Below are positions 4,110 to 56,804 of a stretch of DNA of 64,000 nt, in pieces. The stretch is taken from IMG/VR virus record IMGVR_UViG_3300042566_001512, positions 62,001-126,000 of that record. One strand, written 5' to 3'. The notes below the pieces were generated by a model. The model made no database searches. It worked only from the letters and a program-made list of their open reading frames with translations, and was not told the origin of the DNA. Numbering within the stretch: the first letter of the stretch is position 1; each line of letters begins with the position of its first letter. Made by a program: the position numbers and the translations under genes.

Positions 4110-5500
4110 AAATGCCGCTTGTAACAAACGATCAACACAGCCCTAGTGGTATAACAAACGCATCGCCCGTGCCGATAGTGCCTGCGCCTATTGAGACGGT
4201 AAGAGTATCAACCGACGATATAAAAACGCCAGTTGTAGATACAAAATGGATACCGAGAAGCAGCTTGCTTACGCATATCGGCGGAAGTAGCTGGATAGTG
4301 GATTATTACTCTCAAGTACTAGACACGGACTCCAATTTGTCTGGTCAACAATACACTAAAAACCCAGTATATCAGTCATACAAAAAAATAAACAATCTAG
4401 AAATAAAGGTGCAGACGCCCCTTAGCACCGATCAAGACGACGCAAGCAAAGAAATGAACGTGACAGGTTCGGGGACTCTATATCCCTCTGTTATACCGAA
4501 TGAAGGAGATATGTTTGTCGCCGATATAGGTGAGGGTAAGAATGCCGTATTTAGAATTACGTCGACTAGAAAAAACAGTATATTTAAAGAAGCGTGTTAC
4601 GATATCTCCTATGTTCTAGACACTGATAATTTAGACAAACAGACCGATCTAGATCAAAAAACAATAATCACCTATTATTTCCATAAAGACTTTCTATACG
4701 CCGGAAGCAATCCATTGGTTATAAAGACCGATATGGATACACTTGTCAATATTAAGAAAGTATACGACATAATGCTGTATCAATATTTTAAAAGGTTCTA
4801 CAGCAATGAATTTAAGACACTGGTGGTCCCTTCACAACTAAAGCCAACTTACGACACATACCTATCGAAATACATATTGGACATGTTCTCCACCAGCGAG
4901 GCTAACGAGCTGGCATACATGAAGCTTCTGAATTTAGACGAAGACAGAGTAAGTCGGTGCGATAGTTTATGGGACGCCCTAAAATACAAAGACATTTCCT
5001 TACTCAATACTGCATTTAGAAAGATAGGGCTGGTTTCTTCTCTTACATTTAACAGAACCCCGACGTTTAACGGAGTAAGGTACAGCGGCATTGGCGCCGT
5101 GGTTTACCCAAAGGACCCCTACCTCACTGTTGATCACACTTACGTAAACAACGTAAAAGTAGTAGAAGCCGCAGGTCTTCAGCCATCTGCCGATTCCGAG
5201 TCTTCCAGTAACATTTTAGTCAGAGCAATAAACCTTAGAAACCTAAATAGTGATCTAGGCGATTCTCTTTATCCAGTAACAGTGGATGATTATTACGTAC
5301 TTAGTGAAAATTTTTATAACAATACGCAGCAGCAATCTACCCTGGAGACTGCCGTTAATGCTTACCTAAACAATAGTCAAGTTGACATATACCAACTATA
5401 TAACACAGCAAAGACGTTCCACTCGTGGGGTAGTCTAGAGCAGTTTTACTATGTGCCGATAATAATGACACTAATTAAGTCGGTTCTAAAAGGGATTTGA
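4106..5500 (+). CDS. phiKZ-like virion structural protein
   Basis: 464-aa ORF coupled to its neighbours; 'SSLLTHIGGSSWIVDYYSQVL' and 'PNEGDMFVADIG' segments typical of this family. Confidence 0.5.
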   Translation: MKMPLVTNDQHSPSGITNASPVPIVPAPIETVRVSTDDIKTPVVDTKWIPRSSLLTHIGGSSWIVDYYSQVLDTDSNLSGQQYTKNPVYQSYKKINNLEIKVQTPLSTDQDDASKEMNVTGSGTLYPSVIPNEGDMFVADIGEGKNAVFRITSTRKNSIFKEACYDISYVLDTDNLDKQTDLDQKTIITYYFHKDFLYAGSNPLVIKTDMDTLVNIKKVYDIMLYQYFKRFYSNEFKTLVVPSQLKPTYDTYLSKYILDMFSTSEANELAYMKLLNLDEDRVSRCDSLWDALKYKDISLLNTAFRKIGLVSSLTFNRTPTFNGVRYSGIGAVVYPKDPYLTVDHTYVNNVKVVEAAGLQPSADSESSSNILVRAINLRNLNSDLGDSLYPVTVDDYYVLSENFYNNTQQQSTLETAVNAYLNNSQVDIYQLYNTAKTFHSWGSLEQFYYVPIIMTLIKSVLKGI

Positions 5501-5503
5501 AAA

Positions 5504-6073
5504 ATGTACTCCGACGAGCAAGAAAAAGAACATTTACAAATTTTAGATATAATTTTTGATAGAAAATACGAAATTCGCATCAAAAAAATAGACAACGTGA
5601 GTGTGGAGGAAATTGAATTCTACGGAATGTACTCTACTGGCGATAAAGATTACGACGACTCTTTAAATAACGAAATAATAACTCGCTGGATGTCAATAAG
5701 CGAGATGGTGGAGTACTTTAAAAGAGGTAAGCCGTTTAGTATAGCTAACCCGGCTAACACGCAAGAGATATACGACGTAATACATAAATACTTACTTTCA
5801 TGGAAGGCCAGATTAGAAAACTCACTTAACGTGGGTAATGCACCTGTGGACGATTTAATAGCATTAGATGGTCTGGCATCTGCGGTTCACGGCTACGCTT
5901 GCCAGTATATGAAAGTGGAAAGAACGCAGTCTCCTCTACTAAACTTCTTTGACAGTGTGGGTCTTGGAAGAAAAACCGAAGTTATAGAAAGTAAGCCGAA
6001 TGACACCGGTGTAAAAAGACACACGAGCCTGGCAGAGATCTTCTCAGAGGCAGTAATGGGGTACAGGAGGTAA
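5504..6073 (+). CDS. Conserved jumbo-phage hypothetical protein
   Basis: 189-aa ORF tightly packed in the operon. Confidence 0.6.
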   Translation: MYSDEQEKEHLQILDIIFDRKYEIRIKKIDNVSVEEIEFYGMYSTGDKDYDDSLNNEIITRWMSISEMVEYFKRGKPFSIANPANTQEIYDVIHKYLLSWKARLENSLNVGNAPVDDLIALDGLASAVHGYACQYMKVERTQSPLLNFFDSVGLGRKTEVIESKPNDTGVKRHTSLAEIFSEAVMGYRR

Positions 6074-22476: not shown

Positions 22477-22552
22477 GGGACGTTAGCTCAGCGGTTAGAG
22501 CAGAGGACTCATAATCCTTTGGTCAGGTGTTCAAATCACCTACGTCCCACCA
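22477..22552 (+). tRNA. trnI-CAU: tRNA with CAU anticodon, most likely tRNA-Ile2 (Met not excluded)
   Basis: Full 76-nt cloverleaf GGGACGT...ACGTCCC-A-CCA with GAGGA-CTCATAA-TCCTT; D and anticodon arms resemble E. coli ileX; TilS gene nearby. Confidence 0.93.
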
Positions 22553-22704
22553 TTTTCATAATACCCAGGAAATAAATTTCCTGGGTATTATGCCTATTAC
22601 TATTTTTTTGCCAGATTATAATTATTTTTAGTAACATATTCTAAATGCGAACAGAAGCAAAAGCGCTTCTATTTCGACAGTAAAATATCAGAAAGGTTCT
22701 AACC

Positions 22705-22950
22705 GTGTCTCTAGTTTGCTCTGGTCAGAGTTTTACCGTATACGTAGATGTCAAAATTGAAGGCATTTGTACTATCCCCAACATTAACATCTACACAAAG
22801 GACCCAAGTATAGATGGCACCAAAGCGGCTTTCCTGAAGAGCATGGAGCAGTTTGCCAACTCTGAGCACTTTGCAAAAATTGTTTATGAGCTTGAGAATG
22901 GCTTTTGTATACATGTAATTCATACCGCTCACCTGGATATGCCAGGTTAA
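22705..22950 (+). CDS. Hypothetical protein
   Basis: GTG start after AAAGG, downstream of a promoter-like motif. Confidence 0.5.
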   Translation: MSLVCSGQSFTVYVDVKIEGICTIPNINIYTKDPSIDGTKAAFLKSMEQFANSEHFAKIVYELENGFCIHVIHTAHLDMPG

Positions 22951-22977
22951 ACAATAGTTTCAATAAAAGGAAAAAAC

Positions 22978-23334
22978 GTGGCCATTAAACCGCAAGACGT
23001 CGACAAATGCTTTGTCGACCTACCATGCATCCCCAGTGTCGATGAGTTGGAAAACTACATTGATAACAAGTTGTGCGATCCATTGTTTTTGAAAAAGTGC
23101 TATCAGCACACCCGGCTTAAACAACCTATCGAGCATACTCAAACGGTAAGTTACGAAATCAGACTGCCTGATGCAACCACGCCAGATTCTAAGACACTGA
23201 AGTTACTAGAGCAACGATACGTGGCAGCCGGATGGAACCAGCTTGCACTCGTATACGGATCGACTGAAAAAGACTTTTACGAAGTTAATCTGGTTCTCAT
23301 TCGGATTGTGGAGCCCGGCAAATACCGTATTTAA
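22978..23334 (+). CDS. Hypothetical protein
   Basis: AAGGA RBS with GTG start; 118 aa. Confidence 0.6.
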   Translation: MAIKPQDVDKCFVDLPCIPSVDELENYIDNKLCDPLFLKKCYQHTRLKQPIEHTQTVSYEIRLPDATTPDSKTLKLLEQRYVAAGWNQLALVYGSTEKDFYEVNLVLIRIVEPGKYRI

Positions 23335-23344
23335 TAGTTAAAGT

Positions 23345-23980
23345 ATGTCAAAAATTCATTTCCTGAGCAAACCCAACAAAGAAATCTATCTTGCGTTCTC
23401 CGGTGGCGTAGACTCGGTTGTTCTGCTACATACACTAATTCGTAGAAATTACAGTGTAGCACTACTTACCGTCGACCACGGTAATGAATTTGCTAAACAA
23501 GAAGTAGAGTTTTGTAAGAAGACCGCAAAGGAATTGGGATTAGAGTACAAGATATTTACTATTCCTGATTTTGATAAATCCACGTCACTTGAGGCGTTTT
23601 GGTCGAATCACAGGAACGACATTTTCCAAAAAATGGACAAGATGGTCGTGAGCGGGCATCATCTGAACGACGCCTGTGAATGGTACCTGATGTCCACTTT
23701 TCAAGGTACGCCAAAGCTTCTAGAGCACACCAACAGGAACGTGCACCGACCAATGATTACCAATACAAAGAAAGTCATCATTGAGTATGCTAATAAATAC
23801 AACTTGACGTACCTGACTGACCCCACTAACGCAGATACTACTTACAATCTAAGAAACAAAGTAAGAGCCGAGCTAATGGGAAGTGTAAAGAGTTGTTTTC
23901 CTGGTATTGAAACTACCGTGAAGAGACTCATCGTTAGAAAATATTTAAATAAAATGAAGTCGGTAGAAAATAGCATTTAA
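23345..23980 (+). CDS. tilS: Minimal tRNA(Ile)-lysidine synthetase (PP-loop domain only)
   Basis: AFSGGVDS PP-loop, VDHG, GHHLND, HRPM, YLTDPTN and RNKVR; 211 aa. Confidence 0.88.
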   Translation: MSKIHFLSKPNKEIYLAFSGGVDSVVLLHTLIRRNYSVALLTVDHGNEFAKQEVEFCKKTAKELGLEYKIFTIPDFDKSTSLEAFWSNHRNDIFQKMDKMVVSGHHLNDACEWYLMSTFQGTPKLLEHTNRNVHRPMITNTKKVIIEYANKYNLTYLTDPTNADTTYNLRNKVRAELMGSVKSCFPGIETTVKRLIVRKYLNKMKSVENSI

Positions 23981-24004
23981 TTTAAATACTATTTTCTTTA
24001 GGAC

Positions 24005-24562
24005 TCGGTGTTGAGGTAAAAAATATCTAGTTCAACATTGTTATGCGAGATAGTAAACGCAGGCACTGTCGTAATAACAGATCACAATAAATGCTCACCA
24101 ATAAAGCGCGGTTAAGTAAGTCACAAGCGAGCTTTATAACCATTACTACGTGTAATCGATTGTATTGCATGAGCGCTTTTTGGATCGTGGACAAATACTG
24201 TTGTGACTATGAAGACGGCATCCCATTTTTAATGGGGCAGCAAGTAATAGTGGAAAATTGTGGAAGTGCTGTCAAAAAACAGTATATAGGGCAACCAATC
24301 CCAGTCCCCGGGTTTAACCGTGCTTTAAAATAAAAAGCTAACTGGGGAACAGCTTGCTGTGTGAATTCTCCTAAAATTGATATGCTAAAAACGTATCAAG
24401 CCAAATACAAAGCAATTTGTAGAGGTAGTGAAATACAATAGGAGAGACCCATCTATACGTAACTAAGATCGGGTTGTAAGTATTTCAAGTCATGCTAGCA
24501 TGACTGTCCCTCTAGTGATAGAGGGTATCCTAATACATATTTAGAAAAGTATGTATTAGGAT
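24005..24562 (+). ncRNA. Candidate structured ncRNA A (~560 nt)
   Basis: Dense nested stems, two probable pseudoknots and a GCAA tetraloop, between tilS and the tRNA-Leu 5' half. Strand is inferred from context. Confidence 0.5.
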
Positions 24563-24569
24563 GCTTTGT

Positions 24570-24598
24570 GCGGGGGTGGTGAAATTGGTAGACACAAC
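24570..24598 (+). pseudogene. 5' half of an interrupted tRNA-Leu (acceptor strand plus D arm)
   Basis: GCGGGGG-TG-GTG-AAATTGGTAGA-CAC-A-AC; pairs 7/7 with the acceptor strand at 25618-25624. Confidence 0.85.
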
Positions 24599-24674
24599 CT
24601 CACTATTTCTTTTTCTATTTGATTTCAATCGCTTATCACTATAATGGTAGTATAAAATAGTGATTGGAGTTAAT

Positions 24675-25226
24675 ATGAAAAATGAATTACAAGAGAAGTG
24701 TAGTGTAAACGATAATGTTGCTTTAGATAAGAAAACTCTTCTGGGGTTATATCCAGAATACACATCTGTTCTTGGTCCCTACTTTAGACCGGACGGAAGA
24801 CAACACGTTATTTTAAATAATGCTAAAGCACCTAAAGGCACTAAAGATAAAACAAAAACTATATCTTACCCTAAGGCACTTAAAGAAGTTGAGTTAAAAG
24901 AAAAATTAAAACCTGATGAAACTGTAGATCATCATGATAGAGATTTTACTAATGACAAATTAAGTAATCTTAAGGTAAAATCTAAATCAATTCACGCGTC
25001 GCAGGATGCGCTTAGAGTTACTGTAAAGCCTATTAATTGTCCAGAATGTTCAAACCTTTTTACGCCTAACGTAAATCAAAGAAACAAACAACATGCCGGT
25101 AAAGGACAAGCTGGTCCTTTTTGTAGTAAAGTGTGTGTCGGTAAATACGGCGCAAGAGTACGAAATGAAGGCGTTATCTTAGAGAGAACGTCATTAGAAA
25201 AAACATATTATCGCATAGATAAGTAA
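24675..25226 (+). CDS. Free-standing HNH homing endonuclease with C-terminal Zn finger
   Basis: ETVDHHDRDFTNDKLSNL...H; CPEC...FCSKVC; GGAG RBS; lower GC. Confidence 0.85.
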   Translation: MKNELQEKCSVNDNVALDKKTLLGLYPEYTSVLGPYFRPDGRQHVILNNAKAPKGTKDKTKTISYPKALKEVELKEKLKPDETVDHHDRDFTNDKLSNLKVKSKSIHASQDALRVTVKPINCPECSNLFTPNVNQRNKQHAGKGQAGPFCSKVCVGKYGARVRNEGVILERTSLEKTYYRIDK

Positions 25227-25234
25227 TAAGCTAT

Positions 25235-25552
25235 CCGACTGTGACGGAACTGGTATACGTAGCAGACTTTGACTAATTTGAGTGCCTTTGAGGAAACTCT
25301 TAGAGTAGAACGCTTCAAATTCGGTGGAACTCCTACTTAACTTATGTTAAGGGACAATACCGAGCCAAGCTTTAGTTGTTAATAAACAACTATCGAAGGT
25401 GTAGAGACTAGACGGGGCGAACCTAATACAAAAGTAATGGTTAAGGTATAGTCCAGACTACAACATTTTTAAAATGGCTTAGGTAACTAAGAGTAGTAAG
25501 AAAATCTGCCGAAGGAAACTTCATGTGGGTTCAAATCCCACCAGTCGGACCA
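25235..25552 (+). tRNA. trnL-UAA: tRNA-Leu(UAA), 87 nt mature, with a group I intron (exons 25235-25269 and 25501-25552)
   Basis: CCGACTG/CAGTCGG-A-CCA acceptor; spliced arm GCAGA-CTT|AAAA-TCTGC; GAAG-GAAA-CTTC variable arm. Confidence 0.93.
25270..25500 (+). mobile_element. Group I intron (tRNA-Leu type, 231 nt, no ORF)
   Basis: P AAATTCGGTGGAA (25317), Q AATACCGAGCC (25356), R GTAGAGACTAGACG (25401), S AAGGTATAGTCC (25443); IGS TTTGAG; terminal G; insertion at U^AA. Confidence 0.92.
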
Positions 25553-25573
25553 ATATATTAAGAAAACAAAACA

Positions 25574-25628
25574 TAAAATCTGTCGGAGAGCAATCTCCAT
25601 ACGGGTTCGATCCCCGTTCCCCGCACCA
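25574..25628 (+). pseudogene. 3' half of the interrupted tRNA-Leu(UAA)
   Basis: TAA-AA-TCTGT, GGAGA-GCAA-TCTCC arm, ACGGG-TTCGATC-CCCGT, TCCCCGC-A-CCA. Confidence 0.88.
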
Positions 25629-25712
25629 TTTAAAAAATCTGATTTTAATTTATTTCAATTATATATTCTAAATGTGAGTAATAACTACTCAAGTTTTAAA
25701 AGGAAACACAAA

Positions 25713-26147
25713 ATGTCTTTCAATGCAAATGTCCTTGTGCAACTCGCTGGTGCTGAGATCAATGACGAATACAGCAGCAATCTCAACAGCATGCCCGTGG
25801 AACTCAAGCAAGCTCTGCAAGAACAACGTGAAGCTGAACGCAAAGCACTGTACGCTGAAGCCGCAAAACTCATCATGGGTATCTTCAAGCGCACCGAAGA
25901 AAAGATTGCCCAAGAAGTGCAAGAGATCCGTGAGGCTCGTCAGCGTGAAGCTAAGGCCAAGGCGCGGATTGCGGATATTGAGCGTGCCAAGCAGTACGCT
26001 GAAGAAACCAACAACTATTTGCCACTGGCTCTGTTGTGCGGAACCATGGTCATCCCTTCCGGAACTGTGAATCGTGAAAAGTTCAGTGTCCCGGTGGAAT
26101 GGAAACCCAAGTCCGAATCGGTCAAAAAAACGCCAGCTAAGAAGTAA
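25713..26147 (+). CDS. Coiled-coil hypothetical protein (144 aa)
   Basis: AAGGA RBS, GC-rich codons, E/R/K-rich helix and basic tail; promoter-like motif at 25660. Confidence 0.8.
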   Translation: MSFNANVLVQLAGAEINDEYSSNLNSMPVELKQALQEQREAERKALYAEAAKLIMGIFKRTEEKIAQEVQEIREARQREAKAKARIADIERAKQYAEETNNYLPLALLCGTMVIPSGTVNREKFSVPVEWKPKSESVKKTPAKK

Positions 26148-27325
26148 GTAGTAGCTAGGTCCAGTCTCGTGAAGGCCGAGACCGATGACGGTGCATAATC
26201 GTCATCGCGACGCTTTAAAACTACTTTGTCAAGGCACTAGCGCCTTTTGATTTATTCAAAAAGCTAGCTTTCATCAATTACATTCTTTAAGAGGTAATTG
26301 ATGGTGGTGTATCATGGATCTGCCAATCAAACCGCTTTTTATTTAGAACGATTTAGAATCATTTAAATTATTACTTTACTTAAATGGTTCTATATATTAC
26401 AATACGTTCCAAAATAATCAGTGGTGCGTAGAACATGCAACACCACGTGAGTAACTGGACTCAAACCAAACTCAGTAAAACTTTCTCTGTAATAGTCCTC
26501 AGGATAGCTGCGAGACAACGAATCCGGCTCTCAGGGGTCGGTGGAGTCACTCTTGAGATAGCAGCGATGAAAAGGAGAAAGTAAAAAAGGCTATATGTGA
26601 AACATCGCCGTGGCACGTATAGATAAACTACACAAGCGGTATAGAAATATACAGCAGCCGGATGCTCCGGTATGGTCAATGTGTAGAATTTGAATCGCCC
26701 TTGTGACGAGTAATCAAATTAATGGCCTATAACTCATAAGCTGCGTTGGTGGTGTAGATGGTATCGTACGCGAAGCTTCTATTGAGTTCAATTCCCTTTC
26801 GTGAGAAAGGGTACCTTTAAATACATTTACCCTAGTGTATTTAAAAGTATTTCAAGAACACACGGCAACACCATGTCGTTAGCTTACACAAACCTCTTAT
26901 GAGTTAGGTGAATGCGGTGCGTCGTAGACCTATACCTAGCCCCAAAACGCTTTTAAACGTCACAAGGTAACGACCTAGGCGGTGGACTTTGATTAAAGCG
27001 AGTATATCAGAGTTTACCGGGTATTAAATGGTGCTCGTCATCAGTTGCAATGACTCAAGCTGTTTTAACTAAAAATAGCTTGGAATAGATTGCAGGTGGA
27101 GAGTCTTTCCCAAGAGACTCATAGAAGCCCAGTGATGCCAACTTAAAGTGTTAAGTTCTAACCTCGCAAACTGATCTGTGGTTATTAAATCAAAAAGGCA
27201 AGCTATTGCCTCGATCAGTAAATAGAAGTAAGTAGCGCTGCTTGCCTGATAAAAATCTTTCTCTAGACTTGGTTGTGCTTGTCGAGTGTTGAGGTTTTTA
27301 TTGGAGAGGTAGTTCCTTTAAACTA
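26148..27325 (+). ncRNA. Candidate large ornate ncRNA B (0.9-1.2 kb)
   Basis: No credible ORF; many stems, GNRA loops and perfect 10-bp long-range helices; TATATTAC at 26393; ends just before tRNA-Arg. Confidence 0.6.
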
Positions 27326-27331
27326 ATAAAT

Positions 27332-27408
27332 CTGTCTGTAGCTCAACTGGATAGAGCAGCTGCCTTCTAAGCAGCAGGTCGGGGGTTCGAGTCCCTCCAG
27401 ACAGGCCA
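27332..27408 (+). tRNA. trnR-UCU: tRNA-Arg(UCU)
   Basis: CTGTCTG/CAGACAG-G-CCA; GCTGC-CTTCTAA-GCAGC; TTCGAGT. Confidence 0.96.
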
Positions 27409-54608: not shown

Positions 54609-56804
54609 ATGAATTTCCGTGATATGCTGTCTAGCAAGCCTCAAGAGCAGTCTCCACTTAGTATCATTATTAGTGCGCTGCGTAACGACCTAAGCAACGT
54701 CCCAGGCCGGCAAGTCGTCCCCGAGCAAGTCGCCTCTTCGATGATCTCGATGGAGAGCATGAGCTTCTCGGTTCAAAACGAAGCCCAAGCCGCTTTCGAC
54801 ACGCTCAAGACTATCCAGCGCAGTGTTGCCCAAGCAGCCGGCCTGGGTAACCTCAGCGTTTCTCAAGAGCAAGCCTCTAACCTGGCTGCCGTTTACGCCA
54901 CCAACCCTCGCGCATACGCCGGCTCCAAGCTTCGTGTAGGCGCCGATGCAATGCGTTCGATGGCTGACACCTTCACCACTGTGTCCATCAGCAGTGAAGG
55001 TTCGGCTCCCGTCGTTAGCATGGAGGCATACGACAACAAAGCCAACGACAACATCGCCGCTTTCTCGTACGCATACAACATGCAAGCCGCTCGCCAAGAC
55101 GAAGCAGGTGAGCTGTTCTTCCCGACCATCGTCCAAACCCCTGACATGGCCGGCCTTTCGATCGCCACCCGACTATTTAACGTTCAGGACGATGCCAAAC
55201 GAAACATCAATGGCTCGCTGACCAACTTTAACCGTACCAACATTCTAAAGGCAGTTGTTGACGCAACCGTTCTTCGCAACGACCAGACCGAAATCGTTCC
55301 GGTTGTTCGCACTGGCGGCGGTGCCTCTGACACTACCGCATATTTCGTTAACTCTGCCGACGTTGCTCCCTATGCTCGTATAGTTGACAACACCTCGGTT
55401 ACCACCGCTCCTCTGGCTGTCGGTAAGAGCTTCTCGCTTCTGGGCGTTTCCCAGCGCGATGCACTGATCGCTAACGGCGCCCTGGATTACACCGACTCGA
55501 TCGACACCGCTAGACTGAGCGCAGTCTACATCAAGATCGCCGCTGGCGCTGACCCCGTCGCCGTTCCTGCTGCGGTTATTCGCGTGGACGTTTCGGATCT
55601 CGCAACCAGCGATTTCGAGTACACCATTCAGGGTAACACCCGTAAGCTGAACCTGAACTTCTCGACCAAGTCGATCAAGATCTCGTCGGCCACCACTAAC
55701 ACCGCTGGCGCCGTACCTGCACAATTCACCGCCCTGGGCACTAACGTTGCTCGTCTGGGCCTGTCGATGTTTGGCTCGATCGTGCAAGATCTGGGCGATA
55801 CCGAACTTACCGCTGGCGCCATCGCCGTGGCTAAGGTCTCTAACGCCGCTGGCCAGGTCCTGGATCTGACTACTGGCACTGGTGCTACTGTGGCTGGCGT
55901 GTTTGCTGGTGCCACCGTTATCGGCTACGATCTGAAGTCCTACTTCAGCAACACCAACAAGCGTCAGCGCGGCCAGCTTCTGGATACCCAAGAAGTTCGT
56001 CAACTGTACAACATTCCTCTGCTGCCCCCGATTTCTGTTCTGCGTCCCCTGAGCGAGTCGGAGTCCAACGATGCTGCAATGCTGAACGGCCTGGTCACCA
56101 CCACCCGCATTCGTTGCAGTAACTCGGCAGTTACCGCTCTTCTGGCTGCTCGACAGTCCCTGAAGAATTACGTTAACGCCGCTGACAGCTACACCCAAGC
56201 CCCTGATGCTTTCGGCATTGGTCGCCACATTGTCAACGCCGCTTACGAAGAAGACTCGGTCGACGTTGCTGCTCTGATTGACAGCATCAAAACCAGCGAT
56301 CGCGTGGAAGACCTGCGTGCCCTGCTGATCAACAAGATCCGCGACATGGCAGCCACCCTCTACGTCAAGTCTTCGTATAAGGCTGCTTCTGACGCAATGC
56401 ATGACGGTGCCGATGTCAAACCCACCGTGATCATTGTCACCACTACCTACATCGCTACCTACCTGAACCTGGTTGGCGACACCCGTATGCTGGGCGACCT
56501 GTTCGACGTTAAGCTGGCTATCACTCTCGACAGCCGCATGGAAGGCAAGCTGATCTTCAGCTTTGGCCAGGAAGCGGCACTCAATAGCGGTGTTCCTAAC
56601 CCGCTGCACTTCGGCATGATGGGCTATCGCCCTGAACTGACCGTCATGATGCCCGTTACCCGCGGTGGCTCCACCAGCATGGAACTGACTGTTCAACCGT
56701 CGTTCCGTCACGTGGTGAACTGCCCCATCATGGGCTATCTGGAGATCTCTAACATCGACGCAGTCGTCGCATCCAAGGTCGCCATCAATACTAACGCCGT
56801 TTAA
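54609..56804 (+). CDS. Major capsid protein (phiKZ gp120-like)
   Basis: 731 aa; SME cleavage motifs, ARQDEAGELFFPTIV, NPLHFG...PEL and QPSFRHVVNCP; strong GC-rich codon bias. Confidence 0.9.
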   Translation: MNFRDMLSSKPQEQSPLSIIISALRNDLSNVPGRQVVPEQVASSMISMESMSFSVQNEAQAAFDTLKTIQRSVAQAAGLGNLSVSQEQASNLAAVYATNPRAYAGSKLRVGADAMRSMADTFTTVSISSEGSAPVVSMEAYDNKANDNIAAFSYAYNMQAARQDEAGELFFPTIVQTPDMAGLSIATRLFNVQDDAKRNINGSLTNFNRTNILKAVVDATVLRNDQTEIVPVVRTGGGASDTTAYFVNSADVAPYARIVDNTSVTTAPLAVGKSFSLLGVSQRDALIANGALDYTDSIDTARLSAVYIKIAAGADPVAVPAAVIRVDVSDLATSDFEYTIQGNTRKLNLNFSTKSIKISSATTNTAGAVPAQFTALGTNVARLGLSMFGSIVQDLGDTELTAGAIAVAKVSNAAGQVLDLTTGTGATVAGVFAGATVIGYDLKSYFSNTNKRQRGQLLDTQEVRQLYNIPLLPPISVLRPLSESESNDAAMLNGLVTTTRIRCSNSAVTALLAARQSLKNYVNAADSYTQAPDAFGIGRHIVNAAYEEDSVDVAALIDSIKTSDRVEDLRALLINKIRDMAATLYVKSSYKAASDAMHDGADVKPTVIIVTTTYIATYLNLVGDTRMLGDLFDVKLAITLDSRMEGKLIFSFGQEAALNSGVPNPLHFGMMGYRPELTVMMPVTRGGSTSMELTVQPSFRHVVNCPIMGYLEISNIDAVVASKVAINTNAV

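What the first reader, a model, noticed from the sequence alone, without database searches (positions are those of the whole stretch)
24570..25628. tRNA inside a tRNA: HNH plus intron-protected replacement tRNA-Leu inserted into an ancestral tRNA-Leu(UAA)
Seen: halves at 24570-24598 and 25574-25628 rebuild a tRNA-Leu with a 7/7 acceptor stem, A73 and CCA, missing only about 5 nt (AGACT) of the anticodon arm. Between them are an HNH gene and a different, complete tRNA-Leu(UAA) whose anticodon is interrupted by a group I intron. No intact intron-less anticodon arm (CAGACTTAAAATCTG) remains in this locus. Known: free-standing endonucleases and ORF-less introns can home collaboratively, with the intron blocking self-cleavage. 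Inference: a mobile cassette that destroys its target tRNA gene and supplies an immune replacement.
Basis: partly seen in the sequence, partly recalled or inferred. Interest (0 to 1): 0.85.

Follow-up and report, generated by a model that had tools for sequence, protein, structure and literature searches.

The report
Homing cassette carrying a spare tRNA
A jumbo phage's tRNA-Leu gene has been split by a selfish DNA-cutting-enzyme gene that brought its own working, intron-containing tRNA-Leu, and an almost identical phage still has the gene unbroken, so this looks like a natural cut-and-replace mobile element.

Summary
Window 24570-24598 and 25574-25628 are the two ends of one tRNA-Leu(UAA) gene. 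Between them lie a 183-aa HNH endonuclease gene (24675-25226) and a second, complete tRNA-Leu(UAA) (25235-25552) with a 231-nt group I intron between U34 and A35.

The decisive result is an empty site. A freshwater-metagenome contig (L094) is 100% identical to the window over the 2,102 nt upstream. At this position it carries an uninterrupted 89-nt tRNA-Leu(UAA), where the window has 1,002 nt in place of 32 nt. The exchange points lie inside the tRNA body, so the tRNA halves acted as homology arms.

The architecture recurs with different tRNA sequences in diverged phages (L005, L007, L009, L078, L097; reversed order in L064). Split acceptor stems still pair 7/7 there. Other family members are encoded inside the same intron family (L024, L027, L037).

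HNH synonymous divergence from the closest relative (dS 0.59) is far below that of the flanking gene (1.56).

Best reading: a homing-endonuclease cassette that breaks a tRNA gene and supplies a spare. Intron-based immunity is plausible but unproven, because four of nine clade members carry intron-less spares. I found no published description.

The parts
24570..24598 (+). Outer tRNA-Leu(UAA), 5' remnant (acceptor 5' strand, D arm, A26, first 2 nt of the anticodon stem). 24570-24596 is identical to the intact allele in L094.
24597..25598 (+). The 1,002-nt segment that replaces 32 nt (L094:2103-2134) of the intact allele. It holds 2 nt of stem, the leader, HNH, the spare tRNA, a spacer, and 25 nt of donor-type outer 3' flank.
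24599..24674 (+). Cassette leader: an 8-bp hairpin (24635-24642 / 24657-24664) followed by GGAG (24666-24669). The blastn block covering leader and HNH (24613-25229) is about 84% identical to L007.
24675..25226 (+). HNH homing-endonuclease gene (183 aa): an I-HmuI-like catalytic module plus a C-terminal CxxC...GPFC..C zinc-finger-like (zf-FCS-type) module.
25235..25269 (+). Spare (inner) tRNA-Leu(UAA), 5' exon, ending in U34.
25270..25500 (+). ORF-less group I intron (231 nt) between U34 and A35; it ends in G.
25501..25552 (+). Spare (inner) tRNA-Leu(UAA), 3' exon with A73 and encoded CCA.
25553..25573 (+). 21-nt A-rich spacer between the spare tRNA and the outer 3' remnant.
25574..25628 (+). 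Outer tRNA-Leu(UAA), 3' remnant. 25574-25598 (anticodon onward plus variable arm) is donor-type. 25599-25628 (T arm, acceptor, A73, CCA) is identical to the intact allele.

Best explanation
The locus is a free-standing homing-endonuclease cassette that lives inside a tRNA gene and does not splice out. Instead of restoring the broken gene at the RNA level, it carries a complete spare tRNA-Leu(UAA). Proposed cycle: (1) In a mixed infection the HNH enzyme nicks or cuts the DNA of an intact tRNA-Leu(UAA) gene of a related phage, in the anticodon-arm region (inferred). (2) The break is repaired from the cassette-bearing genome. The two remnants of the split tRNA flanking the cassette serve as short, portable homology arms, because tRNA D and T arms are conserved. 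Shown here: the exchange points relative to the empty allele lie at A26 and at the variable-arm/T-arm border, and 25 nt of foreign 'exon' came in with the cassette. (3) The recipient's tRNA-Leu is thereby destroyed, and the spare copy keeps UUA decoding (inferred from an intact cloverleaf and a conserved, covariation-supported ribozyme). (4) The spare escapes the enzyme. In this phage the likely reason is that the group I intron at 34/35 splits the anticodon-arm DNA; elsewhere it may be sequence differences (inferred, least certain step). The ORF-less intron can move with the HNH, as in collaborative homing.
For: Empty site: L094 equals window 22495-24596 with 0 mismatches in 2,102 nt. It then has 32 nt that complete an ARAGORN- and Rfam-called tRNA-Leu(taa) (53.2 bits), then window 25599 onward, identical for about 457 nt. 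Recurrence: the order 5' half - HNH - spare tRNA-Leu(UAA) - 3' half occurs in L005, L007, L009, L078 and L097 with unrelated tRNA sequences, and the split acceptor stems pair 7/7 (chance about 0.001 each). L064 has the spare tRNA before the HNH. In the IMG/VR set, 5 of 17 orphan 3' halves downstream of an HNH have a 7/7 partner within 130 nt upstream of it, against 16 of 340 control windows; two of those five are the intron-encoded loci L024 and L027. Orthologous outer halves in the window and L007 differ by two fully compensatory pairs plus one G-U to A-U change, as expected if each was invaded while still intact. Family habit: 29 of 67 unique IMG/VR loci have a tRNA(UAA) gene abutting or spanning the HNH gene, and 5 more abut another tRNA-Leu. 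L024, L027 and L037 have the HNH in the P1 loop of a group I intron at 34/35. The window sits in a 9-member clade (support 100/97) in which every member lies upstream of a tRNA-Leu(UAA). The enzyme looks active: all invariant residues are present and dN/dS is 0.18 against L007. Horizontal spread: HNH dS is 0.59 against 1.56 for the adjacent PP-loop gene. In run X3 the cassette contigs are 98.5-100% identical to the window while the PP-loop gene contigs are about 90-96%. Spare tRNA and intron: (45 of 73 pairs with compensatory changes across 6 phage pre-tRNAs).
Against: No cleavage data exist for this or any family member. The direction of the polymorphism is inferred: loss of the cassette by gene conversion from another intact tRNA-Leu would give the same pair of alleles. 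The empty allele has a different anticodon stem from the donor-type remnant (CCGGA against ACAGA), so the enzyme must tolerate stem variation or read the loop or D arm. Four of nine clade members have intron-less spares, so the intron cannot be the general immunity device. No donor with matching outer flanks was found. The dS values are from one pair of sequences and the larger one is near saturation. Many family loci show only the 5' half (type C), so the fully nested form is one of several states.
Confidence: 0.72

Rival explanations
1. Old, now immobile scar. The cassette entered an ancestor long ago, and the HNH is domesticated or merely persisting. The intact allele in L094 arose by recent loss, through replacement of the whole segment by recombination with an intact tRNA-Leu from another phage.
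For: L007, about 80% identical overall, has a cassette at the orthologous place behind the same hairpins, so presence could be ancestral. Loss by gene conversion gives the same two alleles as gain.
Against: Long-lived pseudogene halves should not keep 7/7 acceptor pairing through compensatory changes. The window's halves are identical to a working gene. HNH dS (0.59) is much lower than flank dS (1.56), and dN/dS of 0.18 shows selection on the protein. The spare tRNA differs completely between the window and L007, showing turnover rather than stasis.
Confidence: 0.12
2. The cassette is mobile as described, but the intron is not what protects the spare tRNA. Immunity would come from base differences in the spare's D or anticodon stem. 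Alternatively the enzyme is an I-HmuI-like nickase that also cuts its own genome and gains only by favouring its flanks. The intron would then be a passenger that homes along.
For: L007, L012, L091 and L097 have intron-less spares. Three of those four have an A-T-rich stem start (AT at positions 27-28), whereas six target-type alleles have C at position 28 (by inspection). The best structural match is I-HmuI. The window's intron is 80% identical to L096's while the exons and HNH are about 60-63%, so the intron may move on its own schedule.
Against: Five of nine clade members do carry an intron. The introns sit at 25/26, 31/32 or 34/35, all within the stretch bounded by the cassette junctions. 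That is hard to explain unless interrupting this stretch matters. Without its intron, the window's spare would share a 15-nt core with the donor-type target.
Confidence: 0.3
3. The outer halves still make a working tRNA: a split gene joined at the RNA level, as in archaeal split tRNAs.
For: Acceptor pairing is preserved in several split loci.
Against: Five nucleotides of the anticodon stem and loop are absent, and directly joined halves are not recognised as a tRNA. In L005 the 3' remnant lacks even the T-stem 5' strand. I noted no leader complementarity or bulge-helix-bulge context on reading the sequence, and bacteria are not known to have the splicing endonuclease (own knowledge). Pairing is explained by recent intactness.
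Confidence: 0.02
4. Assembly chimera or chance juxtaposition of tRNA-like fragments.
For: The sequence is a metagenome-assembled contig, and tRNA motifs are repetitive.
Against: The same filled structure appears in independent assemblies and samples (L092, L093 and a second JGI sample; an X3 contig crosses the left junction). The precise empty allele exists.
Confidence: 0.01

Closest known systems
Collaborative (trans) homing of a free-standing endonuclease with an ORF-less group I intron. Examples: F-CphI next to the intron-containing psbA of cyanophage S-PM2 (own knowledge: Zeng, Bonocora and Shub 2009), and mobE with the I-TevIII-defective nrdB intron of T4 (PMC2790892).
   Same: The endonuclease gene lies outside but next to an intron-containing copy of its presumed target. 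Intron and endonuclease are absent together from the empty allele. The intron plausibly blocks self-cleavage.
   Different: Here the target is a tRNA gene rather than a protein gene. The endonuclease plus a whole replacement gene sit inside a second, destroyed copy of the target, whose halves serve as homology arms.
SegB of phage T4: a free-standing GIY-YIG homing endonuclease in the tRNA gene cluster (PMC2330249; see also PMC13096335).
   Same: A phage endonuclease that recognises tRNA-gene sequence (for SegB, the T-psi-C stem-loop motif) and drags neighbouring tRNA genes into related phages during co-infection.
   Different: A different nuclease family (GIY-YIG against HNH). SegB lies between intact tRNA genes. 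It does not sit inside a split tRNA, and no intron is involved.
Intron-encoded endonucleases of bacterial tRNA introns (I-SspI/I-Ssp6803I in the tRNA-fMet intron, cited in PMC3984707) and the ORF-less tRNA-Leu(UAA) intron of cyanobacteria and plastids.
   Same: The same insertion site (U34/A35) and the same kind of ribozyme. Relatives L024, L027 and L037 have this HNH family inside the intron, in the P1 loop.
   Different: In the window the ORF is outside the intron and outside the spare tRNA. The host is a phage; the 2014 review states that all phage group I introns then known were in protein-coding genes (PMC3984707).
Genes broken by an endonuclease gene that still function. Examples: the mobE-split nrdA of Aeromonas phage Aeh1 (own knowledge: Friedrich et al. 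2007) and 'fractured genes' with endonuclease genes between split-intein halves (PMC2677866).
   Same: A homing-endonuclease gene inserted into, and splitting, its host gene without an RNA-splicing vehicle.
   Different: In those cases function is rescued at the protein level, by subunit assembly or trans-splicing inteins. Here the broken gene is abandoned and a spare gene is carried along.
Synthetic 'Cleave and Rescue' (ClvR) gene drives (own knowledge: Oberhofer, Ivy and Hay 2019).
   Same: The logic is the same: a nuclease that destroys an essential or useful gene, linked to a cleavage-resistant rescue copy.
   Different: ClvR is engineered, Cas9-based, and spreads by killing non-carriers rather than by copying itself into the cut. 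The phage cassette is natural and copies itself into the cut gene.
I-HmuI of Bacillus phage SPO1 (PDB 1u3e).
   Same: The best structural match to the predicted HNH model (Foldseek probability 0.99, 78 aligned columns).
   Different: Only 20% identity, with E=0.046 and TM 0.30. I-HmuI is intron-encoded in a DNA polymerase gene and lacks the C-terminal zf-FCS-like module.

Membership tests
HNH (beta-beta-alpha-metal) homing endonucleases, I-HmuI-like | HNH catalytic motif (His general base, Asn, metal-binding His/Asn) in a beta-beta-alpha fold | tested here: met
   D85-H86, N98 and H107 are invariant across 32 relatives and present in the window protein. PHROG 14913 'HNH endonuclease' at E=5e-16. 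Pfam HNH_3 scores only 17 bits (cut-off 24.8) for this protein but matches 18 of 32 relatives. The AlphaFold model (pLDDT 90.8) best matches I-HmuI at probability 0.99.
HNH (beta-beta-alpha-metal) homing endonucleases, I-HmuI-like | Presence/absence polymorphism of the gene at a defined site between related genomes | tested here: met
   L094 lacks the gene within otherwise identical flanks.
HNH (beta-beta-alpha-metal) homing endonucleases, I-HmuI-like | Site-specific nicking or cleavage of the allele that lacks the gene | not testable with these tools
   Needs purified protein and DNA substrates.
Group I self-splicing intron (tRNA-Leu(UAA) type) | Match to the group I covariance model at or above the curated threshold | tested here: met
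   RF00028 scores 51.3 bits against gathering 50, E=8.7e-12, in the 1.35-kb scan. It was not listed in the whole-window gathering scan with stricter filters, so it passes only narrowly.
Group I self-splicing intron (tRNA-Leu(UAA) type) | Insertion between U34 and A35; 5' exon ends in U; intron ends in G | tested here: met
   ARAGORN reports i(36,231). The 5' exon ends ...CTT and the intron ends ...TAAG.
Group I self-splicing intron (tRNA-Leu(UAA) type) | Conserved helices supported by compensatory changes | tested here: met
   In 6 phage pre-tRNA-Leu sequences, 45 of 73 consensus pairs have double-sided changes. With only six sequences this is supportive, not decisive.
Group I self-splicing intron (tRNA-Leu(UAA) type) | Self-splicing with guanosine | not testable with these tools
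   Needs in vitro transcription and a splicing assay.
Classic mobile group I intron (endonuclease ORF inside the intron) | Endonuclease ORF located within the intron | tested here: not met
   The ORF ends 8 nt before the 5' exon of the spare tRNA. The feature is met in relatives L024, L027 and L037.
Collaborative homing pair (free-standing endonuclease plus ORF-less intron) | Endonuclease gene adjacent to an intron-containing copy of the target, with both missing from empty alleles | tested here: met
Collaborative homing pair (free-standing endonuclease plus ORF-less intron) | The enzyme cuts the intron-less allele near the intron insertion site and the intron prevents cutting | not testable with these tools
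   Circumstantial only. Cassette right junctions in several loci fall at U33/U34. Intron-less spares in four clade members argue against generality.
tRNA-Leu(UAA), functional gene (inner copy) | Cloverleaf with long variable arm, UAA anticodon and A73 after intron removal | tested here: met
   ARAGORN calls an 87-nt tRNA-Leu(taa) from the joined exons.
Integrase-type elements that insert into tRNA genes and restore the 3' end | Integrase gene and attL/attR direct repeats that duplicate the tRNA 3' part | tested here: not met
   The insert contains no integrase ORF: its only long ORF is the HNH. On reading the sequence, the junctions are not flanked by direct repeats of the tRNA 3' part. A whole different tRNA is supplied instead.
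Split or permuted tRNA genes joined at the RNA level (archaeal type) | The two halves together give a complete tRNA | tested here: not met
   Five nucleotides are missing and the joined halves are not called a tRNA.

The most novel reading that the evidence does not exclude
Phage tRNA clusters host a widespread, undescribed class of self-contained 'cut-and-replace' homing cassettes. An HNH gene is flanked by the halves of the tRNA gene it destroyed, which act as universal, portable homology arms, and it is linked to a resistant spare tRNA. One intron family has been recruited to three different sites of the same tRNA (25/26, 31/32, 34/35), which would mark an arms race between endonucleases and tRNA(UAA) genes. 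This would be a third way for a homing endonuclease to be harmless to its host, besides RNA splicing (introns) and protein splicing (inteins): carry a replacement gene.
Probability: 0.55. Interest if true: 0.88.

Novelty: new variant of a known kind. Interest (0 to 1): 0.8.

Why it matters
Homing endonucleases are thought to persist either by hiding in self-splicing introns or inteins, or by sitting between genes. This locus shows another solution: insert into the target gene, leave it broken, and bring a resistant spare.

It also gives what may be the first clear cases of group I introns in phage tRNA genes. A 2014 review (PMC3984707) stated that all phage introns then known were in protein-coding genes, and my searches found no later report.

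It suggests how tRNA gene sets in large phages get shuffled. It also provides a natural counterpart of engineered cleave-and-rescue drives.

The system is testable. Filled and empty alleles exist in nature in otherwise identical genomes. A cultured relative, Salmonella phage PVP-SE1, carries an unannotated family member directly upstream of its tRNA-Leu(UAA).

The enzyme family, which presumably reads a short conserved tRNA-gene sequence, could also be of interest as a source of new sequence-specific nucleases.

Tried and rejected
1. Megablast of 23500-26800 against GenBank phages gave no match. Distant blastn found only the intron-tRNA part in three huge phages.
2. Upstream PP-loop protein against IMG/VR found only the window's own contig.
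3. Exact-pattern scans all failed to find a donor or further alleles. The conserved upstream hairpin gave self only in viral contigs and nothing in metagenome contigs. The donor-type outer 3' flank gave self only and nothing.
4. Automatic detection of orphan 5' tRNA halves did not work. A regular expression had 42/341 sensitivity and a sequence-only nhmmer profile barely exceeded control scores. I therefore relied on acceptor-stem pairing with controls and on reading the sequences.
5. Rfam gave no hit for the ORF-poor stretch upstream of the outer tRNA.
6. A sequence search of solved structures with the family profile found only zinc-finger noise. The fold search was needed to reach I-HmuI.
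7. Promoter and terminator consensus scans were no better than shuffles.
8. Considered and rejected: a functional split tRNA (five nt missing), an integrase-type insertion (no integrase or att repeats), an assembly chimera (independent assemblies), and the idea that the nested form is a decayed intron boundary. In the nested loci the right junction keeps U34 (and U33 in L007 and L097), whereas an intron/exon border would keep only A35 onward after a G.
9. Four literature searches for a prior description of an endonuclease-plus-spare-tRNA cassette or of phage tRNA group I introns found none. The library is incomplete, so this is not proof of absence.
Full report
**Setting.** The window comes from a phiKZ-like jumbo phage. 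It encodes a PhiKZ-type major capsid protein (54609-56804), a class I ribonucleotide reductase, an NAD-dependent ligase and an SNF2 helicase. The contig is IMGVR_UViG_3300042566_001512 (208.8 kb), assembled from lake water. It has no close relative among GenBank phages. The finding lies in a small tRNA region, with tRNA-Met at 22477 and tRNA-Arg(UCU) at 27332, just downstream of a PP-loop ATPase gene (23345-23980).

**The observation.** The sequence was read directly.
- 24570-24598 is a tRNA 5' part: a 7-nt acceptor strand, U8, a class II D arm, A26 and two bases of the anticodon stem.
- 25574-25628 begins at the UAA anticodon. It runs through the stem 3' strand, a long variable arm, the T arm, the acceptor 3' strand, A73 and CCA.
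- With the five missing bases supplied, ARAGORN calls an 89-nt tRNA-Leu(taa). With the halves simply joined it calls nothing.
- The ORF at 24675-25226 belongs to PHROG 14913 'HNH endonuclease' (E=5e-16). Its Pfam HNH_3 hit is sub-threshold, but 18 of 32 aligned relatives match that model and 12 match zf-FCS. All invariant residues of the family alignment are present, including D85-H86, N98, H107 and the C-terminal CxxC...GPFC..C.
- An AlphaFold model (pLDDT 90.8) has the HNH homing endonuclease I-HmuI as its best PDB match. The Foldseek probability is 0.99 but the score is modest, at E=0.046.
- ARAGORN with introns allowed finds tRNA-Leu(taa) at 25235-25552 with a 231-nt intron after U34. Rfam's group I model matches at 51.3 bits against a gathering score of 50.
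- In an alignment of six phage pre-tRNA-Leu sequences carrying this intron family, 45 of 73 consensus pairs show compensatory changes. The anticodon stem pairs across the intron.
- The intron-less anticodon arm is absent from the whole window.

**The empty site.** Public runs holding this stretch were found and their contigs laid on 23300-26200. One contig of run X2, a freshwater metagenome from a different study, matched 23300-24596 without a single difference. It then carried 32 other letters and resumed at 25599.
- I fetched that contig through the exact sequence of the PP-loop protein; it is L094, 3,160 nt.
- L094 1-2102 equals window 22495-24596 at 100.000% identity. L094 2135 onward equals window 25599 onward. 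By the first differences are at 26056, so about 457 nt downstream are identical.
- ARAGORN and Rfam both call an uninterrupted tRNA-Leu(taa) at L094 2076-2164.
- The window therefore has 1,002 nt (24597-25598) where a near-isogenic phage has 32 nt.

**The outer gene is a chimera.** Its first 27 nt and last 30 nt are identical to the intact allele. Its anticodon-stem 3' strand and variable arm (25574-25598) are different. So the exchange points lie inside the tRNA body, at A26 on the left and at the variable-arm/T-arm border on the right. About 25 nt of foreign 'exon' arrived with the insert. This is what double-strand-break repair from a donor that already carried the cassette inside another tRNA-Leu would give, with the tRNA halves serving as homology arms.

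**Independent occurrences of the filled form.** It is seen in a Logan contig of the source run (L093), in a second JGI sample, and in contigs of two further metagenomes. One of these crosses the left junction (X3, 24567-24829, 4 differences).

**Relatives.** The HNH protein has 176 database relatives. I examined 75 IMG/VR loci and ten contigs fetched by protein. Of 67 unique IMG/VR loci, 29 have a tRNA(UAA) gene abutting or spanning the HNH gene, and five more abut another tRNA-Leu. L037, filed under 'other tRNA' in that tally, is a third spanning case on inspection. Three states recur.
- **A, intron-encoded.** In L024, L027 and L037 the HNH ORF sits in the P1 loop of a group I intron at 34/35 of a tRNA(UAA).
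- **B, nested as in the window.** The order is 5' half, HNH, complete spare tRNA-Leu(UAA), 3' half. It occurs in L005, L007, L009, L078 and L097; L012 is similar with 5/7 acceptor pairs; L064 has the spare tRNA before the HNH. The split acceptor stems pair 7/7 in seven loci, each with a different sequence. In L097 nothing is missing: the gene is simply opened in the anticodon loop.
- **C, 5' half only.** A 5' tRNA half is followed by the HNH and a complete tRNA-Leu, with no 3' remnant detected (L018, L020, L023, L090, L091 and others). In L065 the upstream half is a 20-nt exact duplicate of the spare tRNA's own 5' end.

A maximum-likelihood tree places the window in a 9-member clade (support 100/97) in which every member sits upstream of a tRNA-Leu(UAA). 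The intron-encoded members form another clade (96/98). Of the 28 loci without an adjacent tRNA, 23 form a separate clade (100/98).

**Signs of movement.**
- The window and L007 share the upstream hairpins, the outer 5' half position, the leader and the HNH (about 81-84% nt identity). Their outer acceptor stems differ by two fully compensatory pairs and one G-U to A-U change. Their spare tRNAs are unrelated: one has an intron and the other does not.
- L007's 3' remnant is also a chimera. Its acceptor matches a resident 5' half at L007 3790. Its anticodon stem matches a second 5' fragment next to the leader.
- HNH synonymous divergence between the two phages is 0.59, against 1.56 for the adjacent PP-loop gene, with HNH dN/dS of 0.18.

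Together these say three things: the protein is under selection, it is younger in these genomes than the genomes' own split, and the tRNA genes were intact when invaded.

**The immunity question.**
- In favour of the intron. Without it, the window's spare would share a 15-nt core with the donor-type target. Five of nine clade members have an intron in the spare. The same intron family, judged by its conserved 3' end and core, sits at three sites. These are 34/35 (window, L090, L096, also L065), 31/32 (L005) and 25/26 (L009). At 25/26, a P1 with a U-G pair at the splice site can be drawn.
- Those three sites bracket the stretch where the cassette junctions fall: left ends at tRNA positions 22-33, right ends at 32-34.
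- Against generality. L007, L012, L091 and L097 have intron-less spares. Three of these four begin the anticodon stem with A-T pairs, whereas six target-type alleles have C at position 28. This is a lead, not a result.
- The intact L094 allele has a different stem from the donor-type remnant, so recognition must tolerate stem changes.
- I-HmuI, the nearest structure, is a nickase that by my recollection also cuts intron-containing DNA.
- I therefore rate intron-based immunity at about even odds.

**Comparison with what is known.**
- Free-standing endonucleases in phage tRNA clusters are known. SegB of T4 recognises the T-psi-C motif and carries neighbouring tRNA genes along (PMC2330249).
- Collaborative homing of a free-standing enzyme with an ORF-less intron is known (PMC2790892; F-CphI/psbA from my own knowledge).
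- An intron-encoded enzyme specific for a tRNA anticodon region is known (cited in PMC3984707).
- Endonuclease genes that split a host gene are known for proteins (PMC2677866; Aeh1 nrdA from my own knowledge).
- What I did not find in six literature searches is an endonuclease cassette lodged in a tRNA gene that carries a spare tRNA, or group I introns in phage tRNA genes. The 2014 review states that all phage introns then known were in protein-coding genes (PMC3984707). A 2026 study of gut jumbo phages reports many group I introns, in terL, nrdD and polymerase genes (PMC12880540).
- I file the finding as a new variant of a known kind, homing-endonuclease mobility. Its logic resembles engineered cleave-and-rescue drives.

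**What is shown and what is inferred.**
- Shown: the anatomy; the intact allele in an otherwise identical genome; exchange points inside the tRNA; recurrence with co-varying stems; the family's association with tRNA(UAA) genes, including intron-encoded members; purifying selection; and lower synonymous divergence than the flank.
- Inferred: that the HNH cuts the intact gene; that gain rather than loss produced the polymorphism; that the intron splices and the spare tRNA is the functional one; and that the intron confers immunity.

Noticed in passing
window 26147-26227 (+); L094 2682-2760: Twister-sister self-cleaving ribozyme candidate right after ORF 25713-26147. It scores 31.7 bits in the window (gathering 34, E=1.6e-4) and 37.6 bits, above threshold, at the orthologous place in the empty-site contig.
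   Followed up: partly
L005 5072-5737: A second, class I-shaped tRNA(UAA) gene in the relative is split right after its anticodon loop by a different HNH_3 gene (5137-5706), with no room for a ribozyme. Its acceptor halves pair 7/7 and its anticodon-stem 3' strand is missing. That phage thus has two tRNA(UAA) genes broken by two different endonuclease genes and one intron-bearing survivor.
   Followed up: partly
L009 4512-4825; L005 4531-4860: The same spare-tRNA lineage (identical acceptor, D and T arms) carries the same intron family at different sites. In L009 it is between nt 25 and 26, with a P1 that has a U-G pair. In L005 it is between nt 31 and 32, where the 5' exon ends in A, which is unusual for group I introns. 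This suggests intron relocation within one tRNA.
   Followed up: partly
window 23981-24569; L007 2755-3790: An ORF-poor stretch (590 nt in the window, about 1 kb in L007) lies between the PP-loop gene and the outer tRNA. It contains some group-I-core-like motifs and ends in two hairpins (about 24506-24565) conserved with L007. Rfam gives no hit.
   Followed up: partly
window 26056 onward compared with L094: The window and the empty-site contig are identical up to 26055. Beyond that they are mismatch-rich (89% identity over the whole 25599-26634 block), so there is a mosaic boundary about 430 nt downstream of the tRNA locus.
   Followed up: no
window 25195-26048 (run X1, contig record 3): A minor variant in the source sample (depth 5.3 against 27.8). 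The HNH 3' end is followed by 93 other letters and then the downstream region from 25633 at about 87% identity. This is probably a related phage with a short, intron-less spare tRNA and no outer 3' remnant. The letters could not be retrieved.
   Followed up: no
L098 (Salmonella phage PVP-SE1, NC_016071 65256-67084): A cultured phage carries an unannotated family member (42% identity) between tRNA-Ile and tRNA-Leu(UAA). A tRNA 5' fragment lies directly before its start codon, and further tRNA-like debris lies upstream.
   Followed up: partly
L001 2995-3285 (LR756501, 735-kb phage); L002 2995-3356 (Agrobacterium phage Atu_ph07): Deposited huge-phage genomes contain tRNA-Leu(UAA) genes with group I introns at 34/35 (205 and 278 nt). 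These are not annotated in the records.
   Followed up: partly
window 23345-23980: A PP-loop ATPase (ATP_bind_3, with weaker QueC and PAPS-reductase-like hits; possibly a tRNA-modifying enzyme) lies directly upstream of the tRNA region. It is conserved in L007 and, at another position, in L005.
   Followed up: no
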